Assembly: GCF_006345805.1 (NCBI RefSeq)
Contig: NC_043009.1
Location: 65,596,001 to 65,660,000, forward strand
Source: Octopus sinensis
Taxonomy: Eukaryota
Reading direction: 5' to 3'
DNA length: 64,000 nucleotides
Shown here: piece after piece, positions 1,359 through 57,480 of the stretch
How the letters are laid out: each line of letters starts with the position of its first letter
Position numbering within the stretch: position 1 is the first letter of the stretch
Translations under genes and position numbers: made by a program
Notes under the pieces: model-generated
Told to the model about the DNA's origin: nothing
Databases searched by the model: none
Seen by the model: the letters and a program-made list of their open reading frames with translations, nothing else

Positions 1359-1565
1359 GTGTCTGTGTTTGTCCACCCCACCTCATCACTTGATGATCCG
1401 CATTGCTGTTTGCATCTCCGTAACTTAGCGGTTCCACGAATGTGACAGATAGAATAAGTACCAGGCTTAAAAACTGTCCAGGGGTCGATACATTCGACCA
1501 AAAGGTCAAGGCGGTGCTTCAGCATGGCCGTAGTCTAATGACTGTAACAAATAAAAGAACAGAAT
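1359..1565 (+). mobile_element. SINE group A, diverged 3' half
   Basis: Matches the 3' part of the full copies (TAACTTAGCGGTTC...ATAAGTAC...GGGGTCGAT...GGCGGTGCTTCAGCATGGCCG). Confidence 0.7.
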
Positions 1566-3039: not shown

Positions 3040-3475
<436 letters not shown>

Positions 3476-3661
3476 GTCTATCAAGCAATCTATCTATCAA
3501 TTTATCCTCATACACAGGTCTGTGTGTGTGTGTGTGTCTGTGTGTGTGTATGTATGTGTGGAACCATTTATACTTAAAAAGTCCTTTAGTCATGTCGGTT
3601 TGTACAGACACGATTCCCTAATACACTGAAACGTATAGGCAACGGGTCTTATAATTTTTCA

Positions 3662-5920: not shown

Positions 5921-6037
5921 ATATATAAACGACAGGCTTCTTTCAGTTTCCACCTACCAAATCCACTCACAAGGTTTTGGTTGACCCGAGGCTATTCTAG
6001 AAGACACTTGCCCAAATTGCTATGCAGTGGGACTGAA
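5921..6037 (-). mobile_element. SINE group A, internal fragment
   Basis: Reverse complement of the TTCAGTCCCACTGC...GGGCAAGTGTCTTC...GAAAGAAGCCTGTCG segment. Confidence 0.85.
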
Positions 6038-6089: not shown

Positions 6090-6487
6090 GGCGCAGGAGT
6101 GGCTGTGTGGTAAGTAGCTTGTTTACCAACCACAGGGTTCCGGGTTCAGTCCCACTGCATGGCACGTGTCTTCTATTATAGCCTCGGGCCGACCAAAGCC
6201 TTGTAAGTGGATTTGGTAGACGGAAACTGAAAGAAGCCCGTCGTATATATGTATATATATATAGCTGTGCGTGTATGTTTGTGTGTCTGTGTTTGTCCCC
6301 CAGCATTGCTTGACAAACGATGTGTTTATGTCCCCGTCACCTAGCGGTTCGGCAAAAGAGACCGATAGAATAAGTATTGGGCTTACAAAGAATAAGTCCC
6401 GGGGTCGAGTTGCTCGATTAAAGGTGGTGCTCCAGCATGGCCGCAGTCAAATGACTGAAACGAGTAAAAGAGTAAAGAGTAAAGAGT
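6090..6487 (+). mobile_element. SINE group A, full length (tRNA-like head, CORE-like domain)
   Basis: GGCGCAGGAGTGGCTGTGTGG (A box-like), GGTTCAGTCCC (B box-like), internal (TA)/(TG) tract, (TAAAGAG)n tail. Near-identical to 17184, 43530, 52051 and 57111. Confidence 0.9.
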
Positions 6488-7489: not shown

Positions 7490-8020
7490 GACCCTGGCGT
7501 CTACAAATTTAAACTTCGTAAAGTATACTTTTAAATACATTTTCATGCAGAGAATTTGAACACTTCGGAATTTGTCGAAACAGGGTCTGAAATAAGAGAG
7601 AAACGCTTCTGGTGGAAACTTTACGATTATGTCTCTTCTTGTCTGCAGACGTGAAAATGATGTTGTAGCGGAAACTCTACAAATCCAAAATCTACGACGA
7701 GGAACACGATTTCTTTGGTAAACAGAGGGAAGAATGAAATGTTAGAGGCAAGTAGAGACACCGTATTTCGTTATGCAACCATAAAATACAAACGACTTAC
7801 AAGTCAATATTGTGTCTTACTGTGCTAGCAGTGGTATTTCTTTAGAAGTTATAACCAGCACAATAATTTCTATAGAAAATCTGTAGAGAAATTAAGCATA
7901 CGTATATCCTTAACAAGAAGAATGAAAGGGAAACTAATACCAATTTACTAAGATGTATATCTTGCTTCAGGGTCAAAAATATTGACTTTGGTTCGTCAAT
8001 AGTGTCATATTGAAAACAAG
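7490..8020 (+). pseudogene. Decayed Ser/Thr kinase (PIM/CAMK-like) subdomains IV-VII
   Basis: 7568-7648 reads EFVETGSEIREKRFWWKLYDYVSSCLQ. After a +1 shift, 7650-7717 reads RENDVVAETLQIQNLRRGTRFL. A GT..AG intron (7718-7970) joins in frame to W-VKNIDFGSSIVSY*. DFG is kept, HRD is lost, and there are frameshifts and a stop. Confidence 0.45.
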
Positions 8021-8044
8021 GTCAAGTGAAAGGCAAAAACTTGT

Positions 8045-11000
8045 CATGGGTGGTTCGCCAATCCAGATCGATAAAATGACTTAGCGTGTCACCAATCGAG
8101 TTCGATAAAATGACGTAGCGGTTCCCCAATGGAGTTCGATAAAATGATATAGCGGTTTGCCAATCGAGATCGATAAAATGACATATCGGTTCGCCAATCG
8201 AGATCGATAAAATGACTAAGCGGTTCGCCAATTAAGATCGATGAAATGACATAGCAGTTCGCTATCGAGATCGATAAAATAAAAGAACGGTTCGCCAATC
8301 GAGATGGATAAAATGACATAGCCGTTCGCCAATCGAGATCGATAAAATGACATAGCGGTTCGCCATTCGAGATCGATAAAAGGACATAGCGGTTCGCTAA
8401 TCGAGATCGATAAAAGGACATGGCGGGTCGCCAATCGAGAGCGATAAAATGACGTAGCGGTTCGCTAATCGAGATCGATAAAACGACATAGCGGTTCGCC
8501 AATCGAGATCGATAAAATGACATAGCGGTTCGTCAATCGGTTTCGATAAAATGACATAGCGGTTCGCCAATCAAGATCGACAAAATAACATATCGGTTCG
8601 CGAATCGAGATCAATAGAATGACATATCGGCTCGCCAATCGAGATCGATAAAATGACTTAGCGGTTCGCCAATCGAGATAGATAAAATGACATAGCGGTT
8701 CGCCATTCGAGATCGATAAACGGACATAGCGGTTCGCCAATCGAGATCGAAAAAATTACGTAGCGGTTCGCTAATCAAGATCTATAAAATGACATAGCGG
8801 GTCGCCAATCGAGAGCGATAAAATGACATATCGGTTCGCCAACGAGATCGATAAAAGGACAGCGGTTCGTCAATCGAGATCGATAAAATGACTTAGCGGT
8901 TCGCTAATCGAAATCGATAAAAGGACATATCGGCTCGCCAATCGAGATCGATAAAATGACTTAGCGGTTCGCCAATCGAGATAGATAAAATGACATAGCG
9001 GTTCGCCATTCGAGATCGATAAACGGACATAGCGGTTCGCCAATCGAGATCGAAAAAATTACGTAGCGGTTCGCTAATCAAGATCTATAAAATGACATAG
9101 CGGGTCGCCAATCGAGAGCGATAAAATGACATATCGGTTCGCCAACGAGATCGATAAAAGGACAGCGGTTCGTCAATCGAGAACGATAAAATGACTTAGC
9201 GGTTCGCTAATCGAAATCGATAAAAGGACATATCGGTTCGCCAATCAAGATCGATAAATGACTTAGCGGTTTGCCAATCAAGATCGATGAAAATACATAT
9301 CGGTTCGCCAATCGAGATCGATAAAAGGACATAGTGGTTCGCCAATCGAGATCGATAAAAGGACATAGCGGTTAACCAATGGGGATCGATAAAATGACAT
9401 AGCGGTTTGCCAATCGAGATCGATAAAATGACGTAGCGGTTCGCTAATCGAGATCGATAAAATGACATAGCGGTCCGCCAATCGAGATGGATAAAAGGAA
9501 ATAACGGTTCGCCAATCGAGATGGATAAAATGACATAACGATTCGCCAATCAAGATCAATAAAATGACTTAGTGGTTCTCCAATCGAGATCGATAAAATG
9601 ACATAGCGGTTCGCCAATCGAGATGGATAAAATGACATAGCGATTCGCCAATCAAGATCGATAAAATTACGTAGCGGTTCGCCATTCAAGATCGATAAAA
9701 TGACATAGCGGTTAGCCAATCGAGATGGATGAAATGACATAGTGGTTCGTCAATCGAGATCGATAAAAGGACATATCGGTTCGTCAATCGAGATCGATAA
9801 ATGACTTAGCGGTTCGCCAATCAAGATCGATGAAAATACATAGCGGTTCGCCAATTGAGATCGATAAAAGGACATAGTGGTTCGCCAATCGAGATCGATA
9901 AAAGGACATAGCGGTTAATCAAAGGAGATCAATAAAATGACATAGCGGTTCGCCAATCGATATCGATAAAATGACGTAGCGGTTCGCTAATCGAGATCGA
10001 TAAAACGGCGTAGCGGTTCGCCAATGGAGATCGATAAAAGGACATAGCGGTTCGCAAATCGAGATCGATAAAACGACATAGCGGTTCGCCAATGGAGATC
10101 GATAAAATGACATAGCGGTTCGCTTATCGAGATCGACAAAATGACATAGCGGGTCGCCAATCGAGATCGATAAAATGACATAGCGGTTCGCCAATCAAGA
10201 TCGATGAAAATACATATCGGTTCGCGAATCGATATCGATAAAATGACATAGCGGTTCGCCATTCGAGATCGATAAAAGGACATAGCGGTTCGCCAATCGA
10301 GATCGATAAAAGGACATAGCGGTTCGCTAATCGAGATCGATAAAAGGACATGGCGGGTCGCCAATCGAGAGCGATAAAATGACGTAGCGGTTCGCTAATC
10401 GAGATCGATAAAACGACATAGCGGTTCGCCAATCGAGATCGATAAAATGACATAGCGGTTCGTCAATCGGTTTCGATAAAATGACATAGCGGTTCGCCAA
10501 TCAAGATCGACAAAATAACATATCGGTTCGCGAATCGAGATCAATAGAATGACATATCGGCTCGCCAATCGAGATCGATAAATGACTTAGCGGTTCGCCA
10601 ATCGAGATAGATAAAATGACATAGCGGTTCGCCATTCGAGATCGATAAACGGACATAGCGGTTCGCCAATCGAGATCGAAAAAATTACGTAGCGGTTCGC
10701 TAATCAAGATCTATAAAATGACATAGCGGGTCGCCAATCGAGAGCGATAAAATGACATATCGGTTCGCCAACGAGATCGATAAAAGGACAGCGGTTCGTC
10801 AATCGAGATCGATAAAATGACTTAGCGGTTCGCTAATCGAAATCGATAAAAGGACATATCGGCTCGCCAATCGAGATCGATAAAATGACTTAGCGGTTCG
10901 CCAATCGAGATAGATAAAATGACATAGCGGTTCGCCATTCGAGATCGATAAACGGACATAGCGGTTCGCCAATCGAGATCGAAAAAATTACGTAGCGGTT

Positions 11001-14000
11001 CGCTAATCAAGATCTATAAAATGACATAGCGGGTCGCCAATCGAGAGCGATAAAATGACATATCGGTTCGCCAACGAGATCGATAAAAGGACAGCGGTTC
11101 GTCAATCGAGATCGATAAATGACTTAGCGGTTCGCTAATCGAGATCGATAAAAGGACATATCGGTTCGCCAATCAAGATCGATAAATGACTTAGCGGTTT
11201 GCCAATCAAGATCGATGAAAATACATATCGGTTCGCCAATCGAGATCGATAAAAGGACATAGTGGTTCGCCATCGAGATCGATAAAAGGACATAGCGTTA
11301 ACCAATGGGGATCGATAAAATGACATAGCGGTTTGCCAATCGAGATCGATAAAATGACGTAGCGGTTCGCTAATCGAGATCGATAAAATGACATAGCGGT
11401 CCGCCAATCGAGATGGATAAAAGGAAATAACGGTTCGCCAATCGAGATGGATAAAATGACATAACGATTCGCCAATCAAGATCAATAAAATGACTTAGTG
11501 GTTCTCCAATCGAGATCGATAAAATGACATAGCGGTTCGCCAATCGAGATGGATAAAATGACATAGCGATTCGCCAATCAAGATCGATAAAATTACGTAG
11601 CGGTTCGCCATTCAAGATCGATAAAATGACATAGCGGTTAGCCAATCGAGATGGATGAAATGACATAGTGGTTCGTCAATCGAGATCGATAAAAGGACAT
11701 ATCGGTTCGTCAATCGAGATCGATAAATGACTTAGCGGTTCGCCAATCAAGATCGATGAAAATACATAGCGGTTCGCCAATTGAGATCGATAAAAGGACA
11801 TAGTGGTTCGCCAATCGAGATCGATAAAAGGACATAGCGGTTAATCAAAGGAGATCAATAAAATGACATAGCGGTTCGCCAATCGATATCGATAAAATGA
11901 CGTAGCGGTTCGCTAATCGAGATCGATAAAATGACATAGTGGTTCAACAATCGAGATGGATAAAAGGACATAACGGTTCGTCAATCGAGATCAATAAAAT
12001 GACATAGCGGTTTGCTAATCGAGATCGATAAAATTACATATCGGTTCGCGAATCGATATCGATAAAATGACATATCGGTTCGCCAATCGATTTCGATAAA
12101 ATGACTTAGCGGTTCGCCAATTGAGATCGATAAAAGGACAGAGTGGTTCGCCAATCGAGATCAATAAAAGGACATAGCGGTTTGCCAATCGAGATCGATA
12201 AAATGACATAGCGGTTCGCAAATCGAGATCGATAAAAGGACATAGCGGTTCGCCAATGGAGATCGATAAAATGACATAGCGGTTCGCTTATCGAGATCGA
12301 CAAAAGGACATAGCGGGTCGCCAATCGAGATCGATAAAATGACATAGCGGTTCGTTAATCGTATCGATAAAATAGCATAGCGGTTCGATAATCGAGATCG
12401 ATAAAATGACATAGCGGTTCGCCATTCGAGATCGATAAAAGGACATAGCGGTTCGCCAATCGAGATCGATAAAAGGACATAGCGGTTCGCCAAACGAGAT
12501 CGATAAAATGACATAGCGGTTCGCCAATCGAGATCGATAAAATGACATAGCGGTTCGCCAATCGAGATAGATAAAATGACATAGCGGTTCGCCAAACGAG
12601 ATCGATAAAAGGACATAGCGGTTCGCCAATCGAGATCGAAAAAACATAGCGGTTCGCCAATCGAGGTCGATAAAATGACATAGCTTTTCGCCAATCGAGA
12701 ACGATAAAATGACATAGCGGTTCGCCAATCGAGATCGATAAAAGGACGTAGCGTTTCGCTAATCGAGATCGATAAAATGACATAGCGGTTCGCTAAACGA
12801 GATGGACGAAATGACATAGCGGTTCGCCAATCGTGATCGATGAAATGACATAGCGGTTCGTCAATCGGGATCGATAAAAGGACATTGCGTTTCGCCAATC
12901 GAGATCGATAAAATGACGTGTCGGTTCGCCATACGAGATCGATAAAACGACATAGCGGTTCGCCAATCGAGATCGAGAAAATGACGTATCGGTTCGCCAA
13001 TCGAGATCGATAAAACGACATAGCGGTTTGCCAATCGAGATCGATAAAATGACATAGCGGTTCGCCAATCGAGATCGATAAAGGACATAGCGGTTCGCCA
13101 ATCGAGATCGATAAAATGACAGCGGTTCGCAAATCGAGATCGATAAACGGACATAGCGGGTTGCCAATAGTGATCGATAAAATGACATAGCGGTTCGTTA
13201 ATCGTAATCGATAAAGTGACATAGCGGTTCGCTAATCGAGATCGATAAAATGACATAACGGTACGCCGATCGAGATCGATAAAAGGACATAGCGGTTCGC
13301 CAATCGAGATCGATAAAATGACGTAGCGGTTTGCCAATCGAGATCGATAAAAGGACATAGCGGTTCGCCAATCGAGATCGATAAAATGACATAGCGGTTC
13401 GTCAATCGAGATCGATAAAATGACATAGCGGTTTGCTAATCGAGATCGATAAATGGACATATTGGTTCGCCAATCGAGAACGATAAAATGACATAGCGGT
13501 TCGCCAATCGAGATCAATAAAAGGGTATAGCGTTTCGCCAATCGAGATCGATAAAATGACGTAGCGGTTTGCCAATCGAGATCGATAAAAGGACATAGCG
13601 GTTCGCCAATCGAGATCGATAAAATGTCTTAGCGGTTCGCTTATCGAGATCGACAAAATGACATAGCGGTTCGCCAATCGAGATCGATAAAATGACATAG
13701 CGGTTCGCCAATCGTATCGATAAAATAGCATAGCGGTTCGATAATCGAGATCGATAAAATGACATAGCGGTTCGCCATTCGAGATCGATAAAAGGACATA
13801 GCGGTTCGCCAATCGAGATCGATAAAAGGACGTAGCATTTCGCTATTCGATATCGATAAAATGACATAGCGGTTCGCTAAACGAGATTGACGAAATGACA
13901 TAGCGGTTCGCCAATCGTGATCGATGAAATGACATAGCGGTTCGTCAATCGGGATCGATAAAAGGACATTGCGTTTCGCCAATCGAGATCGATAAAATGA

Positions 14001-16232
14001 CGTGTCGGTTCGCCATACGAGATCGATAAAACGACATAGCGGTTCGCCAATCGAGATCGAGAAAATGACGTATCGGTTCGCCAATCGAGATCGATAAAAC
14101 GACATAGCGGTTTGCCAATCGAGATCGATAAAATGACATAGCGGTTCGCCAATCGAGATCGATAAAATGACATAGCGGTTCGCCAATCGAGATCGATAAA
14201 GGACATAGCGGTTCGCCAATCGAGATCGATAAAATGACAGCGGTTCGCTAATCGAGATCGATAAACGGACATAGCGGGTCGCCAATAGTGATCGATAAAA
14301 TGACATAGCGGTTCGTTAATCGTAATCGATAAAGTGACATAGCGGTTCGCTAATCGAGATCGATAAAATGACATAACGGTACGCCGATCGAGATCGATAA
14401 AAGGACATAGCGGTTCGCCAATCGAGATCGATAAAATGACGTAGCGGTTTGCCAATCGAGATCGATAAAAGGACATAGCGGTTCGCCAATCGAGATCGAT
14501 AAAATGTCTTAGCGGTTCGCCAATCGAGATCGATAAAATGACATAGCGGTTCGTCAATCGAGATCGATAAAATGACATAGCGGTTTGCTAATCGAGATCG
14601 ATATAAGGACATATTGGTTCGCCAATCGAGAACGATAAAATGACATAGCGGTTCGCCAATCGAGATCAATAAAAGGGCATAGCGGTTCGCCAATCGAGAT
14701 CGATAAAAGCACATAGCGATTCGCCATTCGAGATCGATAAAAGGACATAGCGGTTCGCCAATCGAGATCGATAAAAGGATATATCGGTTCGCCAATCAAG
14801 ATCGATAAAATGAAGTAACGGTTCGCTAATCGATATCGATAAAATGACATAGCGTTTTGCCAATCGAGATGGATGAAATGACATAGCGCTCCGCCAATCG
14901 AGATGGATGAAATGACATAGCGGTTCATCAATCGAGATCGATAAAATGACATATCGGTTCGCCAATCGAGATCGATAAAAATACATAGCGGTTCGCCAAT
15001 CGAGATCGATAAAATGACATAGCTTTTCGCCATTCGAGTTCGATAAAAGGACGTAGCGGTTCGCCAATCGAGATCGATAAAAGGACATAGCGGTTCGCCA
15101 ATCGGGATCGATAAAAGGACATAGAGTTTCGCCATTCGAGATCGATAAAAGGACATAGCGGTTCGCCAATCGAGATCGATAAATGGATATATCGGTTCGC
15201 CAATCGAGATCGATAAAATGACTTAGCGGTTCGCCAATCGAGATCGATAAAATGACGTAGCGGTTCGATAATCGAGATCGATAAAATGACATAGCGTTTT
15301 GCCAATCGAGATGGATGAAATGACATAGCGGTTCGCCAATCGAGATGGATGAAATGACATAGCGGTTCGTCAATCGAGATCGATAAAATGACAACGGTTA
15401 GTTAATCGAGATCGATAAAATGACATAGTGGTTCGCCAATCGAGATCGATAAAATGACATAGCGGTTCGCCATTCGAGATCGATAAAAGGACATAGCGGT
15501 TCGCCAATCGAGTTCGATAAAATGACAGTGGTTCGCCAATCGGGATCGATAAAATAAACATAGTGGTTCGCCAATCGAGATCGATAAAAGGACATATCGG
15601 TTCGCCAATCGAGATCGATAAAATGACGTAGCGGTTCGCCAATCGAGACCGATAAAAGGACATAGCGATTCGCCAATCGAGATCGATAAAATGACGTAGC
15701 GTATCGATAATCGAGATCGATAAAATGACATAGCGGTTCGCCAATCGAGATCGATAAAATAACATAGCGGTACGCCAATCGAGATCGATAAAATGACATA
15801 TCGGTTCGCCATTCGAGATCGATAAAATGACATAGCGGTTCGCGAATCGAGATCGATAAAATGAAATAGCAATTCGCCAATCGAGATCGATAAAATGACA
15901 TAGCGGTTCGGCAATTGAGATCGAGGAAATGACGTAGCGGTTCGCCAATCGAGATCGATAAAATGACGTAGCGGTTCGATAATCGAGATCGATAAAATGA
16001 CATAGCAATTCGCCAATCGAGATCGATAAAATAACATTGCGGTTCGCCAATCGAGATCGTTGAAATGACATAGCGGTTCTCCAATCGAGATCGATAAAAT
16101 GACATAGCGGTTCGCCAATCGAGATCGATAAAATGACATAGCGGTTCGCCTATCGAGATCGATAAAATAACATAGCAGTTCGTCAATCGATTTCGATGAA
16201 ATGACATAGCGGTCCGCCAAACATAGATCGAC
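8045..16232. repeat. 34-bp tandem satellite/minisatellite, ~240 monomers, with higher-order duplications
   Basis: Consensus CGCCAATCGAGATCGATAAAATGACATAGCGGTT repeated head-to-tail without spacers. Edge units are more diverged. Confidence 0.97.
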
Positions 16233-16234
16233 AA

Positions 16235-16441
16235 CAAAATATATTTGACAGCAAGCCACACTCTTTGATAGAGAAGGATCTCAGATTTCCAAACTCTGCT
16301 CGATCACTATCAAAGTTATCACTGGCCGTAAAAGATGACGCTGAATATCCACAATACAAATCCGTTGTCAGCATCCGACGCAATCAACGCAACAATTGGA
16401 ATCTTCCAGTGGATCTTACACACGAGCATTTTACCTATTGA
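16235..16441 (+). pseudogene. Possible kinase C-lobe (subdomain X-XI) relic
   Basis: Open frame QNIFDSKPHSLIEKDLRFPNSARSLSKLSLAVKDDAEYPQYKSVV..., with QHP available in another frame. Resembles PIM DIPFEHDEEII...F...S..QHLIRWCLALRPSDRP...NHP. Confidence 0.33.
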
Positions 16442-17183: not shown

Positions 17184-17595
17184 TCTCTTTACTCTCTCTT
17201 TTACTTGTTTCAGTCATTTGACTGCGGCCATGCTGGAGCACCGCCTTTAGTCGACCAAATCGACCCCGGGACTTATTCTTTGTAAGCCCAGTACTTATTC
17301 TATCGGTCTATTTTGCCGAACCACTAAGTTACGGGGACGTAAACACACCAGCATCAGTTGTCAAGCAATGCTAGGGAGGCAAACACAGATACACAAACAC
17401 ACACACATACACATACATATATATACATATATACGACAGGCTTCTTTCAGTTTCCGTCTACCAAATCCACTCACAAGGCATTGGTCGGCCCGGGGCTATA
17501 GCAGAAGACACTTGCCCAAAATGCCACGCAGTGGGACTGAACCCGGAATCATGTGGTTGGTTAGCAAGCTACTTACCACACAGTCACTCCTACGC
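17184..17595 (-). mobile_element. SINE group A, full length
   Basis: Reverse complement of the complete A unit including head and tail. Confidence 0.92.
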
Positions 17596-20164: not shown

Positions 20165-20501
20165 GCATGTGTGTGTGTGTGTATGCATGTGTGTGAGTGT
20201 GTGTGTATGTGTGTGTGTATGTGTGTGTGTATGTGTGTGTGTGTATGTGTATGTGTGTGTATGTGTGTGTGCGTGTATGTGTGTGTGTGTATGTGTGTGT
20301 GTATGTGTGTATGTGTGTGTGTGTATTTGTGTGTGTGTGTGTGTGCGTGTGCGTGTGTGTGTGTGTATGTGTGTGTGTATGTGTGTATGTGTGTGTGTGT
20401 GTATTTGTGTGTGTGTGTGTGTGTGCGTGTGCGTTTGTGTGTGTGTATGTGTGTGTGTATGTGTGTATGTGTGTGTGTGTATGTGTGTGTGTGCGTGTGC
20501 G

Positions 20502-20559
<58 letters not shown>

Positions 20560-29909: not shown

Positions 29910-30027
29910 CACATATGCACATACATACATACATACATACATACATACATACAACATACATACATACATACATATATACTTACATATATTCTTACATACA
30001 TACATACATATATACTTACATACATTC

Positions 30028-30058
<31 letters not shown>

Positions 30059-30095
30059 CATACTTACATACATTCTTACATACATACATACATTC

Positions 30096-30126
<31 letters not shown>

Positions 30127-30155
30127 CATACTTACATACATTCTTACATACATTC

Positions 30156-30186
<31 letters not shown>

Positions 30187-30271
30187 CATACATACATACA
30201 TACATACATACATTCTTACATACATTCTTACATACATACATGCATACATACATTCTTATATACATTCTTAT

Positions 30272-30302
<31 letters not shown>

Positions 30303-30315
30303 CTTACATACATTC

Positions 30316-30346
<31 letters not shown>

Positions 30347-30398
30347 CTTACATTCTTATATACATACATACATACAACATATATACTTACATATATTC

Positions 30399-30429
<31 letters not shown>

Positions 30430-30611
30430 CATACATACATACATACATACATACATACATACATGCATACATACATACATACATGCATACATACATACAT
30501 ATATACTTACATACATTCTTACATACATACATACATACTTACATACATTCTTACATACATACATGCATACATACATACATACATTCTTATATACATACAT
30601 GCATACATACA

Positions 30612-30647
<36 letters not shown>

Positions 30648-37807: not shown

Positions 37808-37907
37808 NNNNNNNNNNNNNNNNNNNNNNNNNNNNNNNNNNNNNNNNNNNNNNNNNNNNNNNNNNNNNNNNNNNNNNNNNNNNNNNNNNNNNNNNNNNNN
37901 NNNNNNN
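37808..37907. other. Assembly gap (100 N)
   Basis: Run of exactly 100 N, typical of a placeholder gap of unknown size. Confidence 0.99.
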
Positions 37908-41489: not shown

Positions 41490-42240
<751 letters not shown>

Positions 42241-43360: not shown

Positions 43361-43527
43361 GGGCTGGCTGTGTGCTAAGAAGTTTGCTTCTTAACCACAT
43401 GGTCTCGGGTTCAGTCCCACTGCGTACCACCTTGGACTAGTGTCTTCTAATTTAACCCCGGGTCAACCAAAGCCTTGTGAGTAGATTTGGTAAAGGGGAA
43501 CTGAACGAATCCTGTCATTCATATATA
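43361..43527 (+). mobile_element. SINE group A, older 5' half
   Basis: Diverged head through GAACTGAACGAATCCTGTC, then (AT)n. Confidence 0.75.
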
Positions 43528-43529
43528 TA

Positions 43530-43915
43530 GACGCAGGAGTGGCTGTGTGGTATGTAGCTTGCTTACCAACCACATGGTTCCGGGTTCAATCTCACTGCGT
43601 GGCACCTTGGGCTAATGTCTTCTACTATAGCCTCGTTCCGACCAAAGCCTAGTGTGTGGACTACGTAGACGGAAACTGAAAGAAGCCCGTCGTATATGTG
43701 TGTGTGTGTTTGTATGTTTGTGTGTCTGTGTTTTTCCCCCACCATCACTTGACAACCGATGTTGGTGTGTTTACGTCTCCGTGACTTAGCGGTTCAGCAA
43801 AAGAAACCGAAAGAATAAGTACTAGGCTTACAAAGAATAAGTCTTGGGGTCGATTTGTTCGATTAAAAGTGGTGCACCAGCATGGCCGCAGTCAAATGAC
43901 TGACGCAAATAAAAG
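43530..43915 (+). mobile_element. SINE group A, full length
   Basis: Complete unit starting right after the (AT) tract of the previous copy. Confidence 0.9.
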
Positions 43916-47422: not shown

Positions 47423-47697
47423 TAGGTAAACAAACAATCACCGGTTGTCAAGCAGAGCTGAGGAGCAAATGCACATACCTGCATGCATACACACACACAC
47501 ATATGTATACATAAATATATATACATACATATATATATATATACATATATGTATATATATATAAATATATATATATATATTATATATATATATATAATAT
47601 ATATATATATATAATATATATATATATATAATATATGTATATATATCTATACCTATATATATGTATGTATATATATATATATGCGCATATACACACA

Positions 47698-47850
47698 CGA
47701 ACGGCTTCTTTCGATTTCCGTTTACCAAATCCATTTAAATGACTTTGGTCGGCTGGGGGCTATAATAGAAGACATACTCCCAACTTGACAGACAGTGGGA
47801 CTGAACCCGGAACTAATTGGTAGGAAAGCAAACTTCTCATCACACACCCA
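47698..47850 (-). mobile_element. SINE group A, diverged 5' half
   Basis: GGCTTCTTTC...TAGAAGACA...CAGTGGGACTGAACCCGGAAC. Confidence 0.75.
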
Positions 47851-48312
47851 CGACTGCTTGCGTGCGAACATGCATGTGTGTGTGTATGTGTGTGTAAAAA
47901 TGGGTATGAATAAAATTCAGTAAAATCAAAGCATCCATACACGGATGAGAATCTATCATCTGGATTTGATAAAGATAAAATGGCTGTCGTTGAACTTTTT
48001 TGTATCTTTTTTATTGTTTTGTCATTTGGTTAATTTGTCTTTTTTTTTTTTTGTTCCTTCGTTTAATTGTTGCTTTCGTTGTAAAGTGTCCTTTGTCCTA
48101 ACACTGGAACTTGTCAATGTGTCGCTCGAAAGCCGAGGACTCCCTCTGCGATACTCCCGTAACTGCCACATCGCAAATACTCGCACCTGAAACACCTTTC
48201 AGCTGCACACGGCTTTTCCCTGCTCTTTATTTTTGTCTGGGGTGTTTGGATTTCACCATTGTATTCCATGGCAGCAGCAGGAGCAATAGCAGCAGCAGAA
48301 GCAGTAACACTG

Positions 48313-48389
<77 letters not shown>

Positions 48390-48439
48390 GAGCAGCAACA
48401 GCAACAGTAGTAGTATTAGTAGTAGTAACATTTTCCCTT

Positions 48440-48620
48440 TTTTCTTATACTAGTTTCAGCCATTAAACTGTGGCCATACTGGGGCATCACCTTGAAGAGT
48501 TTCAGTCGAACTCCAGTACTTATCGTTTTAAGCCGTATAATTATTGTTTCGGTATATTTTGTCGAACCGCTAAGTTATGGGATTGTCACGACATCGACAC
48601 CTTTTGCCAAGTGGTCGGGA
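48440..48620 (-). mobile_element. SINE A-related 3' fragment
   Basis: TAGTTTCAGC...TGTGGCCATACTGGGGCATCACC...GAACCGCTAAGTTA. Confidence 0.6.
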
Positions 48621-48736
48621 CGGGAGAACAACACATTCTCTCCATAAAACTGATAGAGGAAATCAGATGGTTAAAAGAGTAATGATAAACCAAGTAGATA
48701 ATACCTTGAATTTGGATGAACAAATTATTATTATTA

Positions 48737-49933: not shown

Positions 49934-50760
49934 ATCACCACCACCGCCACCATCACCATCATCATCACCATCACCATCATCATCACCATCACCATCATCA
50001 CCACCACCACAACTACCATAACCACCACCATCACCACAACTACCATAATCACCACCACCACAACCCCCGTAACCACCACCACAACCACCACCACCACCGT
50101 CACCATCATCACTACCACCACCACCACCACCATCATCATCCCCACCTTCACCATCATCATCAATGCCTTCACAACCATCACCACCACTACCACAACCAAC
50201 ATCACCACCAATGCCATCATCACTACCATCACCACCATCATCATCACCACCATCACCATCTTCACCATCATCATCACCACCATCATCATCAATGCCATCG
50301 CAACCGTCACAACCACTACCACCACCATCACCATCACCACCACCAACATCACCTCCATCACCACCAACACCACTACATGCAACACTACCACCACCATTTC
50401 CCCCACTGCTACCACCACCAGCTTTAACCCTATCCGCACCGTTACCTTCCTCGTTAGCTCTTCTAATGGCACCAGGCAGCCTTCGCCCCTCCCAACTTCT
50501 ATGCTTCATCACCGTCATCACCGCCATCATCGCTAGCAACATCAACCACGATTACCATTCCTGACTCGACCAACCATCACAAACCCCACCGCCATTACAA
50601 CGATTTCCTCCCTCACTACCCCTACCCCACCACCACCATTACTTCCACAACTACCACAACTACCACAACCACCACAACTACCACAACCACCTCAACCACC
50701 ACCATCACCACCAACACACTACAACCACAACATCACAACCTCCACCACAACCACCACCAC
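49934..50760. repeat. Cryptic (CAC/CAT/AAC) trinucleotide tract, ~820 bp
   Basis: Read directly; source of the Thr-, Gly/Asp- and Pro/Ser-rich ORFs. Confidence 0.93.
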
Positions 50761-51960: not shown

Positions 51961-52048
51961 TCGTTTTTGGATTTGGTTTGCAAGATTCTTTTACCGGTGA
52001 GTGTGTTACATAATAAGACACAAAAAGAAAATGACTCTCCCCAGACAG
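51961..52048. mobile_element. Family 2 fragment with an internal inversion junction
   Basis: A reverse piece (TCGTTTTTGGATTTGGTTTGCAAGATTC) is joined at TTTTA to a forward piece (TTTACCGGTGAG...CCCCAGACAG). Confidence 0.7.
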
Positions 52049-52050
52049 TA

Positions 52051-52225
52051 GGCGCAGGAGTGGCTGTGTGGTAAGTAGCTTGCTAACCAACCACATGCTT
52101 CCGGGTTCAGTCCCACTGCGTGGCATCTTGGGCAAGTGTCTTCTGCTATAGCCCCGGGCCGACCAATGCCTTGTGAGTGGATTTGGTAGACGGAAACTGA
52201 AAGAAGCCTGTCGTATATATATATA

Positions 52226-52260
<35 letters not shown>

Positions 52261-52492
52261 CATGTGTGTGTGTGTTTGTGTGTCTGTGTTTGCCCCCCCT
52301 AGCATTGCTTGACAACCGATGCTGGTGTGTTTACGTCCCCGTCACTTAGCGGTTCGGCAAAAGAGAATGATAGAATAAGTACTGGGCTTACAAAGAATAA
52401 GTCCCGGGGTCGATTTGCTCGACTAAAGGCGGTGCTCCAGCATGGCCGCAGTCAAATGACTGAAACAAGTAAAAGAGTAAAAGAGTAAAGAG
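52051..52492 (+). mobile_element. SINE group A, full length, young subfamily
   Basis: Complete unit sharing diagnostic CCGACCAATGCC and CTGCTATAGCC with 17184 and 57111. Confidence 0.93.
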
Positions 52493-52829
52493 AGACACAA
52501 CAGAATATATATATATATATATTTAAAACTATAAATTAGGGTATCTGAGAGATACCACCATGCTGAAATATGAGTCAAAACCCTGACCCTAAAGCCACAC
52601 AAAATGTTCATATAGCGCTAGGAGAGAAGACAGAGAGACAAAATAAACTAGCAAAAAAGATCTTTCTGGATAATTGAAGGTCCTGGATTTCTGGCTTTGC
52701 ATAAGAGAAGCTCTGCCTTCGTCAGTTGAATATACCAGATAGCACATAAATACAGATATATATAGAGAGAACATACGTTATACTTACATATACGAACGCT
52801 CATACATACATATATACGCACGTATGTAC

Positions 52830-53729: not shown

Positions 53730-54040
53730 AAAGTACAGTGAGAATAAGTACATCGTACTTACTTCACTGAAAATAACATTAAGAAAAGAGATTCAGACAG
53801 TCAGTGAGAAGCAGCTCGTCACTCCCTTGTCCAAATATATTTGGTATTTAAAGGAAGATAATATTAACGATTATGAAATTGATTGGTCCCTTGGTGGACG
53901 TGAACCCCGCCCGACAATTTTAATTGTTGCCGAAGATGTGAAATGTGTCAAGGAAGATCTTTGGGAATTTTAATTGTTGCCGAAGATGTGAAATGTGTCA
54001 AGGAAGATCTTTGGGAATTTTGAACAGAAGGTTAGGATTA
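53730..54040 (+). mobile_element. Penelope-like GIY-YIG endonuclease C-terminal relic
   Basis: ENKYIVLTS...TPLSKYIWYLKEDNINDYEIDWS (53821-53889), resembling YIGLT...TELSKYIW.LK...Y.I.WS, followed by CEMC in another frame. Confidence 0.55.
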
Positions 54041-57110: not shown

Positions 57111-57480
57111 GGCGCAGGAGTGGCTGTGTGGTAAGTAGCTTGCTAACCAACACACGGTTGCGGGTTCAGTCACTGCGTGGCATCTTGGGCAAGTGTCTTC
57201 TGCTATAGCCGGGGCCGACCAATGCCTTGTGAGAGTGGATTGGTAGACGGAAACTGAAAGAAGCCTGTCGTATATGTATATATGTATATGTGTGTGTGTT
57301 TGTGTGTCTGTGTTTGTCCCCCTAGCATTGCTGACAACCGATGCTGGTGTGTTTAGGTCCCCGTCACTTAGCGGTTCGGCAAAAGAGACCGATAGAATAA
57401 GTACTAAAAGGTGGTGCTCCAGCATGGCCGCAGTCAAATGACTGAAACAAGTGTAAAGAGTAAAGAGAGGTAAAAGAGTA
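57111..57480 (+). mobile_element. SINE group A, full length with small deletions
   Basis: Complete unit immediately after (TA)n. Confidence 0.92.

What the first reader, a model, noticed from the sequence alone, without database searches (positions are those of the whole stretch)
8045..16232. 8.2-kb satellite whose monomer matches a 34-bp internal piece of the local SINE
Seen: array consensus ACATAGCGGTTCGCCAATCGAGATCGATAAAATG versus SINE A 57366-57399 ACTTAGCGGTTCGGCAAAAGAGACCGATAGAATA gives 27/34 identity with no gaps. SINE-type states persist as monomer variants: GACTTAGCGG is common (e.g. 8655), GGTTCGGCAA occurs at 15905 and GAGACCGATA at 15645. The SINE copy at ~43781 also supplies the TGAC junction. 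Inference: a SINE subregion was excised in register and amplified ~240 times, i.e. a satellite born from a retroposon. I do not recognise this satellite as described, but could not search for it.
Basis: partly seen in the sequence, partly recalled or inferred. Interest (0 to 1): 0.85.

Follow-up and report, generated by a model that had tools for sequence, protein, structure and literature searches.

The report
SINE-related 34-bp minisatellite array
An 8.2-kb array of 242 copies of a 34-bp unit really does share ancestry with a 34-bp piece of the common local SINE retroposon, so it is probably one more transposon-derived tandem repeat, a kind already known; the extra clues said to prove direct descent from the SINE do not hold up.

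Summary
The array is real. It has 242 head-to-tail units of 34 bp at 8044-16238, on average 92% identical to the consensus ACATAGCGGTTCGCCAATCGAGATCGATAAAATG.

The 27/34 ungapped match to the SINE is also real and far above chance. Five thousand shuffles against the SINE reached at most 24. Six hundred shuffles against the whole window averaged 22.0 and reached at most 24. Every 34-mer outside the array with at least 24 matches lies in a SINE copy.

Homology is therefore established, and it covers exactly one unit, which favours the direction SINE to array.

The supporting details fail:
- SINE-type bases at the 7 diagnostic positions make up 39 of 127 variants, the 1/3 expected by chance.
- No unit carries more than one SINE-type base.
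- Neither array flank shows any SINE remnant.
- None of the SINE copies in the window has an internal duplication of the segment.
- The founder unit already differed from the SINE consensus by 21%, so it was not a fresh copy of the young subfamily.

The array grew by block duplications, for example a 57-unit block copied at 98.6% identity. It has no regular higher-order repeat.

I could not test genome-wide abundance, so calling it a "satellite" is unproven. No public collection available here contains the unit.

Verdict: a probable new example of a known kind (SINE/TE-derived tandem repeats), of moderate interest.

The parts
8044..16238 (+). Array of 242 head-to-tail 34-bp units (consensus ACATAGCGGTTCGCCAATCGAGATCGATAAAATG). 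All units have the same orientation, which is the orientation of a + strand SINE. The edge units are the most degenerate.
   Evidence: TRF. Segmentation and position counts. First and last units are about 82% identical to the consensus. GC 43%, CpG observed/expected 2.37 against 0.83 for the rest of the window.
8282..10041 (+). Block of 52 units that recurs 57 units downstream (10212-11967) at 98.6% identity. This is a recent block duplication inside the array.
   Evidence: Unit-by-unit identity matrix; lag 57.
10212..11967 (+). Second copy of the 57-unit-lag block duplication.
12678..13456 (+). Block duplicated 32-33 units downstream (13762-14574) at about 96-97% identity.
   Evidence: The same event shows as near-identical minus-strand ORF translations.
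57366..57399 (+). SINE segment homologous to the unit (27/34), inside SINE copy 57113-57445.
6339..6372 (+). The same SINE segment (27/34 to the unit), inside SINE copy 6092-6470, 1.6 kb upstream of the array.
17296..17329 (-). The same SINE segment (25/34), inside SINE copy 17198-17594 on the minus strand, 1 kb downstream of the array.
52344..52377 (+). The same SINE segment (26/34), inside SINE copy 52053-52475.
43784..43817 (+). The same SINE segment (24/34), inside SINE copy 43530-43915. This is the only copy with GTGAC upstream of the segment.
1423..1456 (+). The same segment (23/34) in an old, 5'-truncated SINE copy at 1329-1557, 72% identical to the reference SINE copy 43530-43915 used as the BLAST query.
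48542..48575 (-). The same segment (24/34) in an old SINE copy at 47691-48635, about 70% identical to the reference SINE copy 43530-43915 and split by expanded internal microsatellites.

Best explanation
This is a non-coding minisatellite-type array whose 34-bp unit descends from the stretch ACTTAGCGGTTCGGCAAAAGAGACCGATAGAATA in the 3' body of the local dispersed SINE family.

Most likely history, with each step marked as shown or inferred:
1. Inferred: an old or divergent member of the SINE family, already about 20% away from today's consensus in this stretch, underwent a tandem duplication of one 34-bp segment. The likely mechanism is replication slippage or unequal exchange. T-N-A triplets lie at both edges of the segment in the SINE.
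2. Shown: the array then grew by unequal exchange of blocks of units. Duplications are visible at lags of 9, 32-33, 40, 48, 57 and 66 units, the youngest at 98.6% identity. There is no regular higher-order period.
3. Shown as a pattern: all 7 differences from the SINE are fixed throughout the array, so they predate bulk amplification or were spread by homogenisation. Three of them (A18T, A19C, C24T) turn AAAGAGACCGAT into ATCGAGATCGAT, making two near-identical hexamers.
4. Shown: units have since drifted to 8% from their consensus, most strongly at the array edges. Any SINE remainder next to the array is gone, or the array was seeded here from another locus.

Nothing points to a coding or structured-RNA role.
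For: Array anatomy.

Homology with the SINE:
- 27/34 against shuffle maxima of 24 and 23 and 24.
- All strong hits outside the array lie in SINE copies.
- An nhmmer unit profile ranks SINE copies first.

Direction:
- Similarity covers one whole unit and ends there.
- Old SINE copies are about 28-30% diverged, against 8% unit divergence.
- The SINE is dispersed in both orientations, with 10 copies or fragments in 64 kb, whereas the unit occurs at one locus.

No coding or structural signal:
- Flanking ORFs have no Pfam hits and the array ORF only sub-threshold ones.
- No relatives in the protein libraries.
- The DNA fold of a unit trimer is ordinary, z = -0.73.
- No Rfam hits in the window.

Precedent for the kind: squamate SINE-derived satellites (PMC10702118); Alu minisatellites and a mouse B1-derived VNTR listed in PMC9659126.
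Against: - No SINE sequence adjoins the array on either side.
- No SINE copy in the window has an internal duplication of the segment.
- No unit retains more than one SINE-type base, and such bases occur at chance frequency.
- The 21% difference between the consensuses makes a young-subfamily founder unlikely.
- The comparison rests on only 34 positions and one locus.
- The SINE consensus comes from 5 copies.
- Concerted evolution can make an array look younger than it is, so the age ordering is soft.
Confidence: 0.6

Rival explanations
1. Common descent through a third element. The unit was amplified not from this SINE family but from another element that carries the same module, for instance the 3' end of the partner LINE (SINE 3' regions are commonly LINE-derived) or a different SINE family sharing the tail.
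For: - All 7 fixed differences and the absence of SINE flanks.
- The 3' module occurs in strongly diverged copies with different or missing 5' parts (1329-1557), so it is old and possibly shared between families.
- SINE tails derived from LINEs are general knowledge (PMC10702118 background; PMC11481361).
Against: - No LINE or other element carrying the module is visible in the window.
- Every window match of the unit lies in a SINE copy.
- The young SINE consensus matches better (27/34) than the two old copies (23-24/34).
Confidence: 0.2
2. Reverse direction. A pre-existing tandem repeat donated one unit to the body of the SINE when the composite SINE was assembled.
For: The origin of SINE bodies is often unknown (PMC10702118 background). 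The homology itself says nothing about direction.
Against: - The SINE holds exactly one unit-length of similarity, and its neighbouring bases do not continue into the next unit. Capture of a piece of an array would have no reason to stop at one unit.
- The SINE module has copies far more diverged (about 30%) than the units are from each other (14% pairwise).
Confidence: 0.07
3. Chance resemblance between an unrelated minisatellite and the SINE.
For: Only 34 positions are compared.
Against: With exactly that freedom, 600 shuffled units reached at most 24 matches (mean 21.96, sd 0.78) against the observed 27. In the 5000 + 5000 shuffles against the SINE alone, none reached 27. nhmmer gives E = 3.6e-4 for the whole window.
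Confidence: 0.03

Closest known systems
SINE-derived satellites (sSat) of squamate reptiles (Vassetzky, Kosushkin & Ryskov 2023, Mob DNA, PMC10702118)
   Same: A tandem array whose unit corresponds to an internal portion of a tRNA-type SINE. Arrays reach hundreds of units and are imperfectly homogenised. The proposed origin is a primary duplication within or between SINE copies followed by amplification.
   Different: - Most sSat loci keep a longer terminal unit that runs on into the SINE up to its end. Here neither flank has SINE sequence.
- sSats were defined from many loci per genome with a subtelomeric bias. Here one locus is known.
- The host is a mollusc (inferred), not a reptile.
- The unit is 21% away from the SINE consensus.
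Alu-derived minisatellites in human and the mouse B1-derived VNTR family (listed in PMC9659126: Ahmed & Liang 2012; Bois et al. 1998)
   Same: Short units (tens of bp or less) expanded from inside a SINE into VNTR-type arrays at dispersed euchromatic loci.
   Different: Those arrays usually still sit inside a recognisable SINE copy, whereas this one does not. At 8.2 kb and 242 units it is long for that class.
Tandem arrays of whole SINEs in bivalves (PMC11481361)
   Same: A mollusc genome in which SINEs seed tandem structures, probably by unequal homologous recombination.
   Different: In those arrays the repeated unit is a whole or nearly whole SINE, with or without its target-site duplication, in 2-15 copies. 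Here a 34-bp sub-segment is repeated 242 times.
Octopus tRNA-derived SINEs OR1/OR2/OK (Ohshima & Okada 1994; one is counted among the CORE-SINEs, given as OR1 in PMC4824008 and as OR2 in PMC4758252)
   Same: The donor element here has a pol III-type head with box A/B-like motifs, a CTTGGGCAAGT motif like the CORE domain, and a short-repeat tail. The window's microsatellite-rich composition fits an octopus genome. This comparison rests on my own recollection and is a lead only.
   Different: I could not compare sequences because none of these consensuses is available in the tools. tRNA models do not recognise the head.

Membership tests
SINE-derived satellite (sSat sensu PMC10702118) | Head-to-tail tandem array of a short unit | tested here: met
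   242 contiguous units at 8044-16238.
SINE-derived satellite (sSat sensu PMC10702118) | Unit is homologous to a portion of a SINE present in the same genome | tested here: met
   27/34 ungapped. No shuffle reached 27 among 5000 + 5000 against the SINE or 600 against the whole window. All strong window matches lie in SINE copies.
SINE-derived satellite (sSat sensu PMC10702118) | A terminal unit extends into the adjoining SINE sequence up to the SINE end (the pattern of most, but not all, sSat loci) | tested here: not met
   Smith-Waterman scores of both flanks against the SINE are no better than shuffles. The nhmmer SINE profile hits only microsatellites in the flanks. The flanks are unique in the window.
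SINE-derived satellite (sSat sensu PMC10702118) | Intermediates: SINE copies with a few tandem units | tested here: not met
   None of the 8 SINE copies with this segment in the window has a duplication.
SINE-derived satellite (sSat sensu PMC10702118) | Multiple loci per genome, preferentially subtelomeric | not testable with these tools
   No cephalopod genome is available. The JGI metagenome, GTDB genome and IMG/VR scans found nothing.
Satellite DNA in the strict sense | High genomic copy number in long arrays, typically heterochromatic | not testable with these tools
   One 8.2-kb locus is seen. The array translation has no relative among 1.84 billion representative proteins or in the 5.8-billion-protein index, which only shows that the unit is absent from those collections.
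Minisatellite / VNTR | Unit of roughly 10-100 bp, array of 0.5 kb to tens of kb, variant units interspersed | tested here: met
   34-bp unit, 8.2 kb, units 79-100% identical to the consensus, block duplications.
tRNA-derived SINE (the donor element) | Short (under 600 bp) dispersed multi-copy element in both orientations, with 5'-truncated copies and a simple-repeat 3' tail | tested here: met
   10 copies or fragments of about 330-420 bp on both strands. Tail of (TAAAGAG)-like repeats. A 5'-truncated copy at 1329-1557.
tRNA-derived SINE (the donor element) | Head recognisably derived from a tRNA | tested here: not met
   ARAGORN finds no tRNA in the window. Rfam finds no tRNA hit at gathering score or at E up to 10 on copy 52040-52500. 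Box A/B-like motifs (TGGCTGTGTGGT, GGTTCCGGGTTCAGTCC) are seen by eye only.
tRNA-derived SINE (the donor element) | Target-site duplications flanking the copies | tested here: inconclusive
   The flanks of five copies were inspected. Microsatellites at the ends obscure any duplications.
CORE-SINE superfamily / octopus OR-type SINE | Conserved ~60-bp CORE central domain | not tested
   Only a CTTGGGCAAGT motif recalled from memory. No reference consensus is available in the tools. PMC4824008 and PMC4758252 state that an octopus OR SINE is a CORE-SINE.

The most novel reading that the evidence does not exclude
This 34-bp unit is one locus of a genome-wide, CpG-rich satellite family of octopods that arose from the body of the dominant SINE. 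It would then be the first well-documented SINE-derived satellite outside vertebrates, possibly marking particular chromosome regions and possibly kept unmethylated.
Probability: 0.15. Interest if true: 0.6.

Novelty: new member of a known kind. Interest (0 to 1): 0.35.

Why it matters
Direct links between dispersed and tandem repeats are still few. The authors of the squamate study judged the earlier SINE-to-satellite examples they reviewed inconclusive (PMC10702118). A cephalopod case would extend the phenomenon to molluscs, whose genomes are about 12% SINE in Octopus vulgaris (PMC13282606). It would also offer a dated example of how a 34-bp piece of a retroposon becomes a kilobase-scale array. 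On present evidence it is a single locus with solid homology but no junction or intermediate. Its value is therefore as a lead for a genome-wide survey, not as a finished case.

Tried and rejected
1. Reaching eukaryote data through the stop-free minus strand of the array.
   - Two homologous-protein runs with repetitive queries failed.
   - A third, with the edge ORF, found no candidate.
   - The all-against-all HMMER search returned only unrelated tandem-repeat translations at about 34% identity.
2. Exact and degenerate DNA patterns of the unit and SINE segment in JGI metagenomes, GTDB genomes and IMG/VR gave zero hits.
3. A SINE-derived ORF did find two short ENA metagenome contigs. One of them (L001) is an 87% identical SINE copy with a single unit-length segment, so it gives no information on the array.
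4. Full-text searches for the unit or SINE strings, and for cephalopod satellite or satellitome work, found nothing.
5. The array as part of a larger transposon: rejected. The flanks are unique, share no inverted or direct repeats, and have no coding signal.
6. A structured DNA/RNA role: rejected.
7. The degenerate GGTTCGTCAAT piece at 7990, 55 bp left of the array, as an ancestral unit or SINE relic: its score is no better than shuffles.
8. Hypermutable CpGs as a sign of methylation: transitions at the 8 CpG positions (about 4% per site) are no more frequent than at other C/G positions (counts).
Full report
**The array.** Tandem Repeats Finder reports one large array at 8052-16220, with period 34 and 241.3 copies. 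A dynamic-programming segmentation against the consensus ACATAGCGGTTCGCCAATCGAGATCGATAAAATG gives 242 contiguous units from 8044 to 16238. Of these, 214 are 34 bp long and the rest are 31-35 bp. Mean identity to the consensus is 92%, 14 units are exact, and the outermost units are the most degenerate at about 82%. All units have one orientation.

There is no regular higher-order period. Mean pairwise identity between units is 86% at almost every lag. Superimposed on this are block duplications:
- 8282-10041 recurs at 10212-11967, 57 units away, at 98.6% identity.
- 12678-13456 recurs at 13762-14574, at lags 32-33.
- Shorter blocks recur at lags 9, 40, 48 and 66.

The array is the most CpG-dense part of the window. 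Its GC content is 43% and its CpG observed/expected ratio is 2.37, against 37% and 0.83 elsewhere. The minus strand is stop-free, which produces many spurious ORFs. These have no Pfam hit above the curated cut-off and no relatives in either large protein library. A unit trimer folds no better than shuffles, z = -0.73.

**The SINE.** BLAST of the copy at 43530-43915 against the window finds:
- Full copies at 6092-6470 (+), 17198-17594 (-), 52053-52475 (+) and 57113-57445 (+).
- Older or partial copies at 1329-1557, 5925-6037, 43365-43516, and 47691-47857 plus 48456-48635.

The alignment shows the following layout:
- a head with box A/B-like motifs;
- a body;
- an internal (TA)n(TG)n microsatellite of variable length;
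- a conserved 3' part of about 190 bp;
- a tail of TAAAGAG-like repeats.

ARAGORN and Rfam do not recognise the head as a tRNA, so 'tRNA-derived' rests on motifs seen by eye. From memory, the element and the microsatellite-rich context look like an octopus genome and an OR-type CORE-SINE (PMC4824008 and PMC4758252 count an octopus OR SINE, OR1 or OR2, among the CORE-SINEs). I could not test that.

**Is the similarity real?** Yes. The unit matches SINE consensus positions 276-309 (window 57366-57399) at 27/34 without gaps.
- Allowing every rotation, position and strand, 5000 mononucleotide and 5000 dinucleotide shuffles of the unit against the SINE averaged 18.5-18.7 (sd 1.0) and never exceeded 24.
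- Every 34-mer outside the array with at least 24 matches lies in one of 7 SINE copies (6 of them at 24 or more).
- A profile HMM built from the units ranks SINE copies first (E = 3.6e-4, 4.4e-4, 6.8e-3).
- A trimer of the unit aligns to the SINE over 33 bp and no further. The match count falls by about one per base when the window is slid either way. The shared stretch is therefore one unit long.

**What does not hold.**
- At the 7 positions where unit and SINE differ (3, 14, 18, 19, 24, 30, 34), SINE-type bases account for 39 of 127 variant bases (31%). Of all 2187 alternative pseudo-targets, 61% score as high or higher.
- No unit carries more than one SINE state, and no unit is closer than 28/34 to the SINE.
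- The frequent ACTTAG variant (20 units) is outnumbered by ACGTAG (30 units) and is inflated by the block duplications.
- GTGAC upstream of the segment is a private change of one SINE copy.
- Both flanks of the array lack any SINE similarity by Smith-Waterman with shuffles and by nhmmer. They are unique in the window and share nothing with each other. They contain no recognisable coding sequence.
- None of the SINE copies has an internal duplication of the segment.

**Age and founder.** The young SINE copies are 3-6% from their (5-copy) consensus and one copy is 12% away. The old copies are about 28-30% diverged from the reference copy. Units are 7.8% from their own consensus. The two consensuses differ by 20.6%, and the differences are fixed across the array. 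A fresh young-subfamily copy would show 7 or more differences in 34 bp with P = 0.0013 at 5% divergence or P = 0.048 at 10%. The founder was therefore one of three things: an old, decayed copy; a member of another subfamily or a related element; or a unit whose differences were later fixed by homogenisation. Three of the seven changes convert AAAGAGACCGAT into ATCGAGATCGAT, which is two near-identical hexamers and a 5-bp dyad. This hints at change within the unit after or during its origin.

**Explanation and rivals.**
- The best reading (confidence about 0.6) is a minisatellite-type array seeded by tandem duplication of one 34-bp stretch of a SINE-family copy and enlarged by unequal exchange of unit blocks. 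The direction is inferred from the one-unit extent of the homology, the greater age of the SINE module, and the SINE's dispersal against the unit's single locus.
- The main rival (0.2) is descent from a third element that shares the module, such as the partner LINE's 3' end.
- Capture of a satellite unit by the SINE (0.07) fits the one-unit extent poorly.
- Chance (0.03) is close to excluded.

**Comparison with the known.** Tandem repeats derived from SINEs are documented:
- squamate sSats, which usually keep a longer terminal unit continuing into the SINE (PMC10702118);
- human Alu minisatellites and a mouse B1-derived VNTR (table in PMC9659126);
- tandem arrays of whole SINEs in a bivalve (PMC11481361).

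This locus works like those. It fails the 'terminal unit runs into the SINE' feature and cannot be tested for multiple loci. I found no description of this unit, or of any cephalopod satellite, in the searchable literature, nor the sequence in any collection available here.

**Verdict.** This is a probable new member of a known kind and of moderate interest (0.35). The genome-wide survey listed under next steps would decide it.

Noticed in passing
window 8044-16238: The array is a CpG-dense island in an AT-rich, mildly CpG-depleted region: CpG observed/expected 2.37 against 0.83, with 4 CpGs per 34-bp unit. Transitions at the CpG positions are no more frequent than at other C/G positions, which hints that the array is not methylated in the germ line or is being homogenised.
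   Followed up: partly
unit positions 17-28 (e.g. window 8502-8513): Three of the seven fixed differences from the SINE turn AAAGAGACCGAT into ATCGAGATCGAT. This gives two near-identical hexamers (ATCGAG/ATCGAT) and the dyad ATCGA-GA-TCGAT, containing TaqI (TCGA) and ClaI (ATCGAT) sites. The cause is unknown.
   Followed up: partly
window 43365-43915: A 5' SINE fragment (43365-43516, 77% identical) sits head-to-tail directly before a full SINE copy (43530-43915). TRF reports it as a 175-bp repeat with 1.9 copies. It is a tandem-like SINE pair of the sort described in bivalves.
   Followed up: no
window 47691-48635 (-): An old SINE copy has its head (47691-47857) and tail (48456-48635) about 600 bp apart. 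The gap holds expanded (GTA)n and other simple repeats. The SINE's internal (TA)n(TG)n microsatellite also varies widely in length between copies (compare 52053-52475 with the others), so the SINE seeds microsatellites too.
   Followed up: partly
whole window: Simple-repeat density is extreme, with more than 155 TRF rows. Examples: (ACAT)182 at 29919-30645, (ATGT)138 at 41684-42240, (ATCT)117 at 3040-3506, (CAC)n at 49936-50396 and (TG)n at 20168-20559. No credible protein-coding ORF is present.
   Followed up: no
window 37808-37907: A run of exactly 100 N, which is a scaffold gap in the source assembly.
   Followed up: no
window 53916-54021: A perfect (100%) tandem duplication of a 50-bp unit (AATTTTAATTGTTGCCGAAGATGTGAAATGTGTCAAGGAAGATCTTTGGG, 2.1 copies). 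It is a very recent duplication of non-repetitive sequence.
   Followed up: no
L001 (ENA metagenome assembly ERZ23499442, 573-bp contig): A metagenome contig carries an 87% identical copy of the same SINE, with one unit-length segment (CTTAGCGGTTCGGCACAAGAGACACCGATAAAATAAG). DNA of the host or a related animal is therefore present in that sample.
   Followed up: partly
window 6092-6470 (+) and 17198-17594 (-): The two SINE copies nearest the array are in inverted orientation, 1.6 kb upstream and 1.0 kb downstream of it. Given about one SINE per 6 kb, this is probably coincidence.
   Followed up: no
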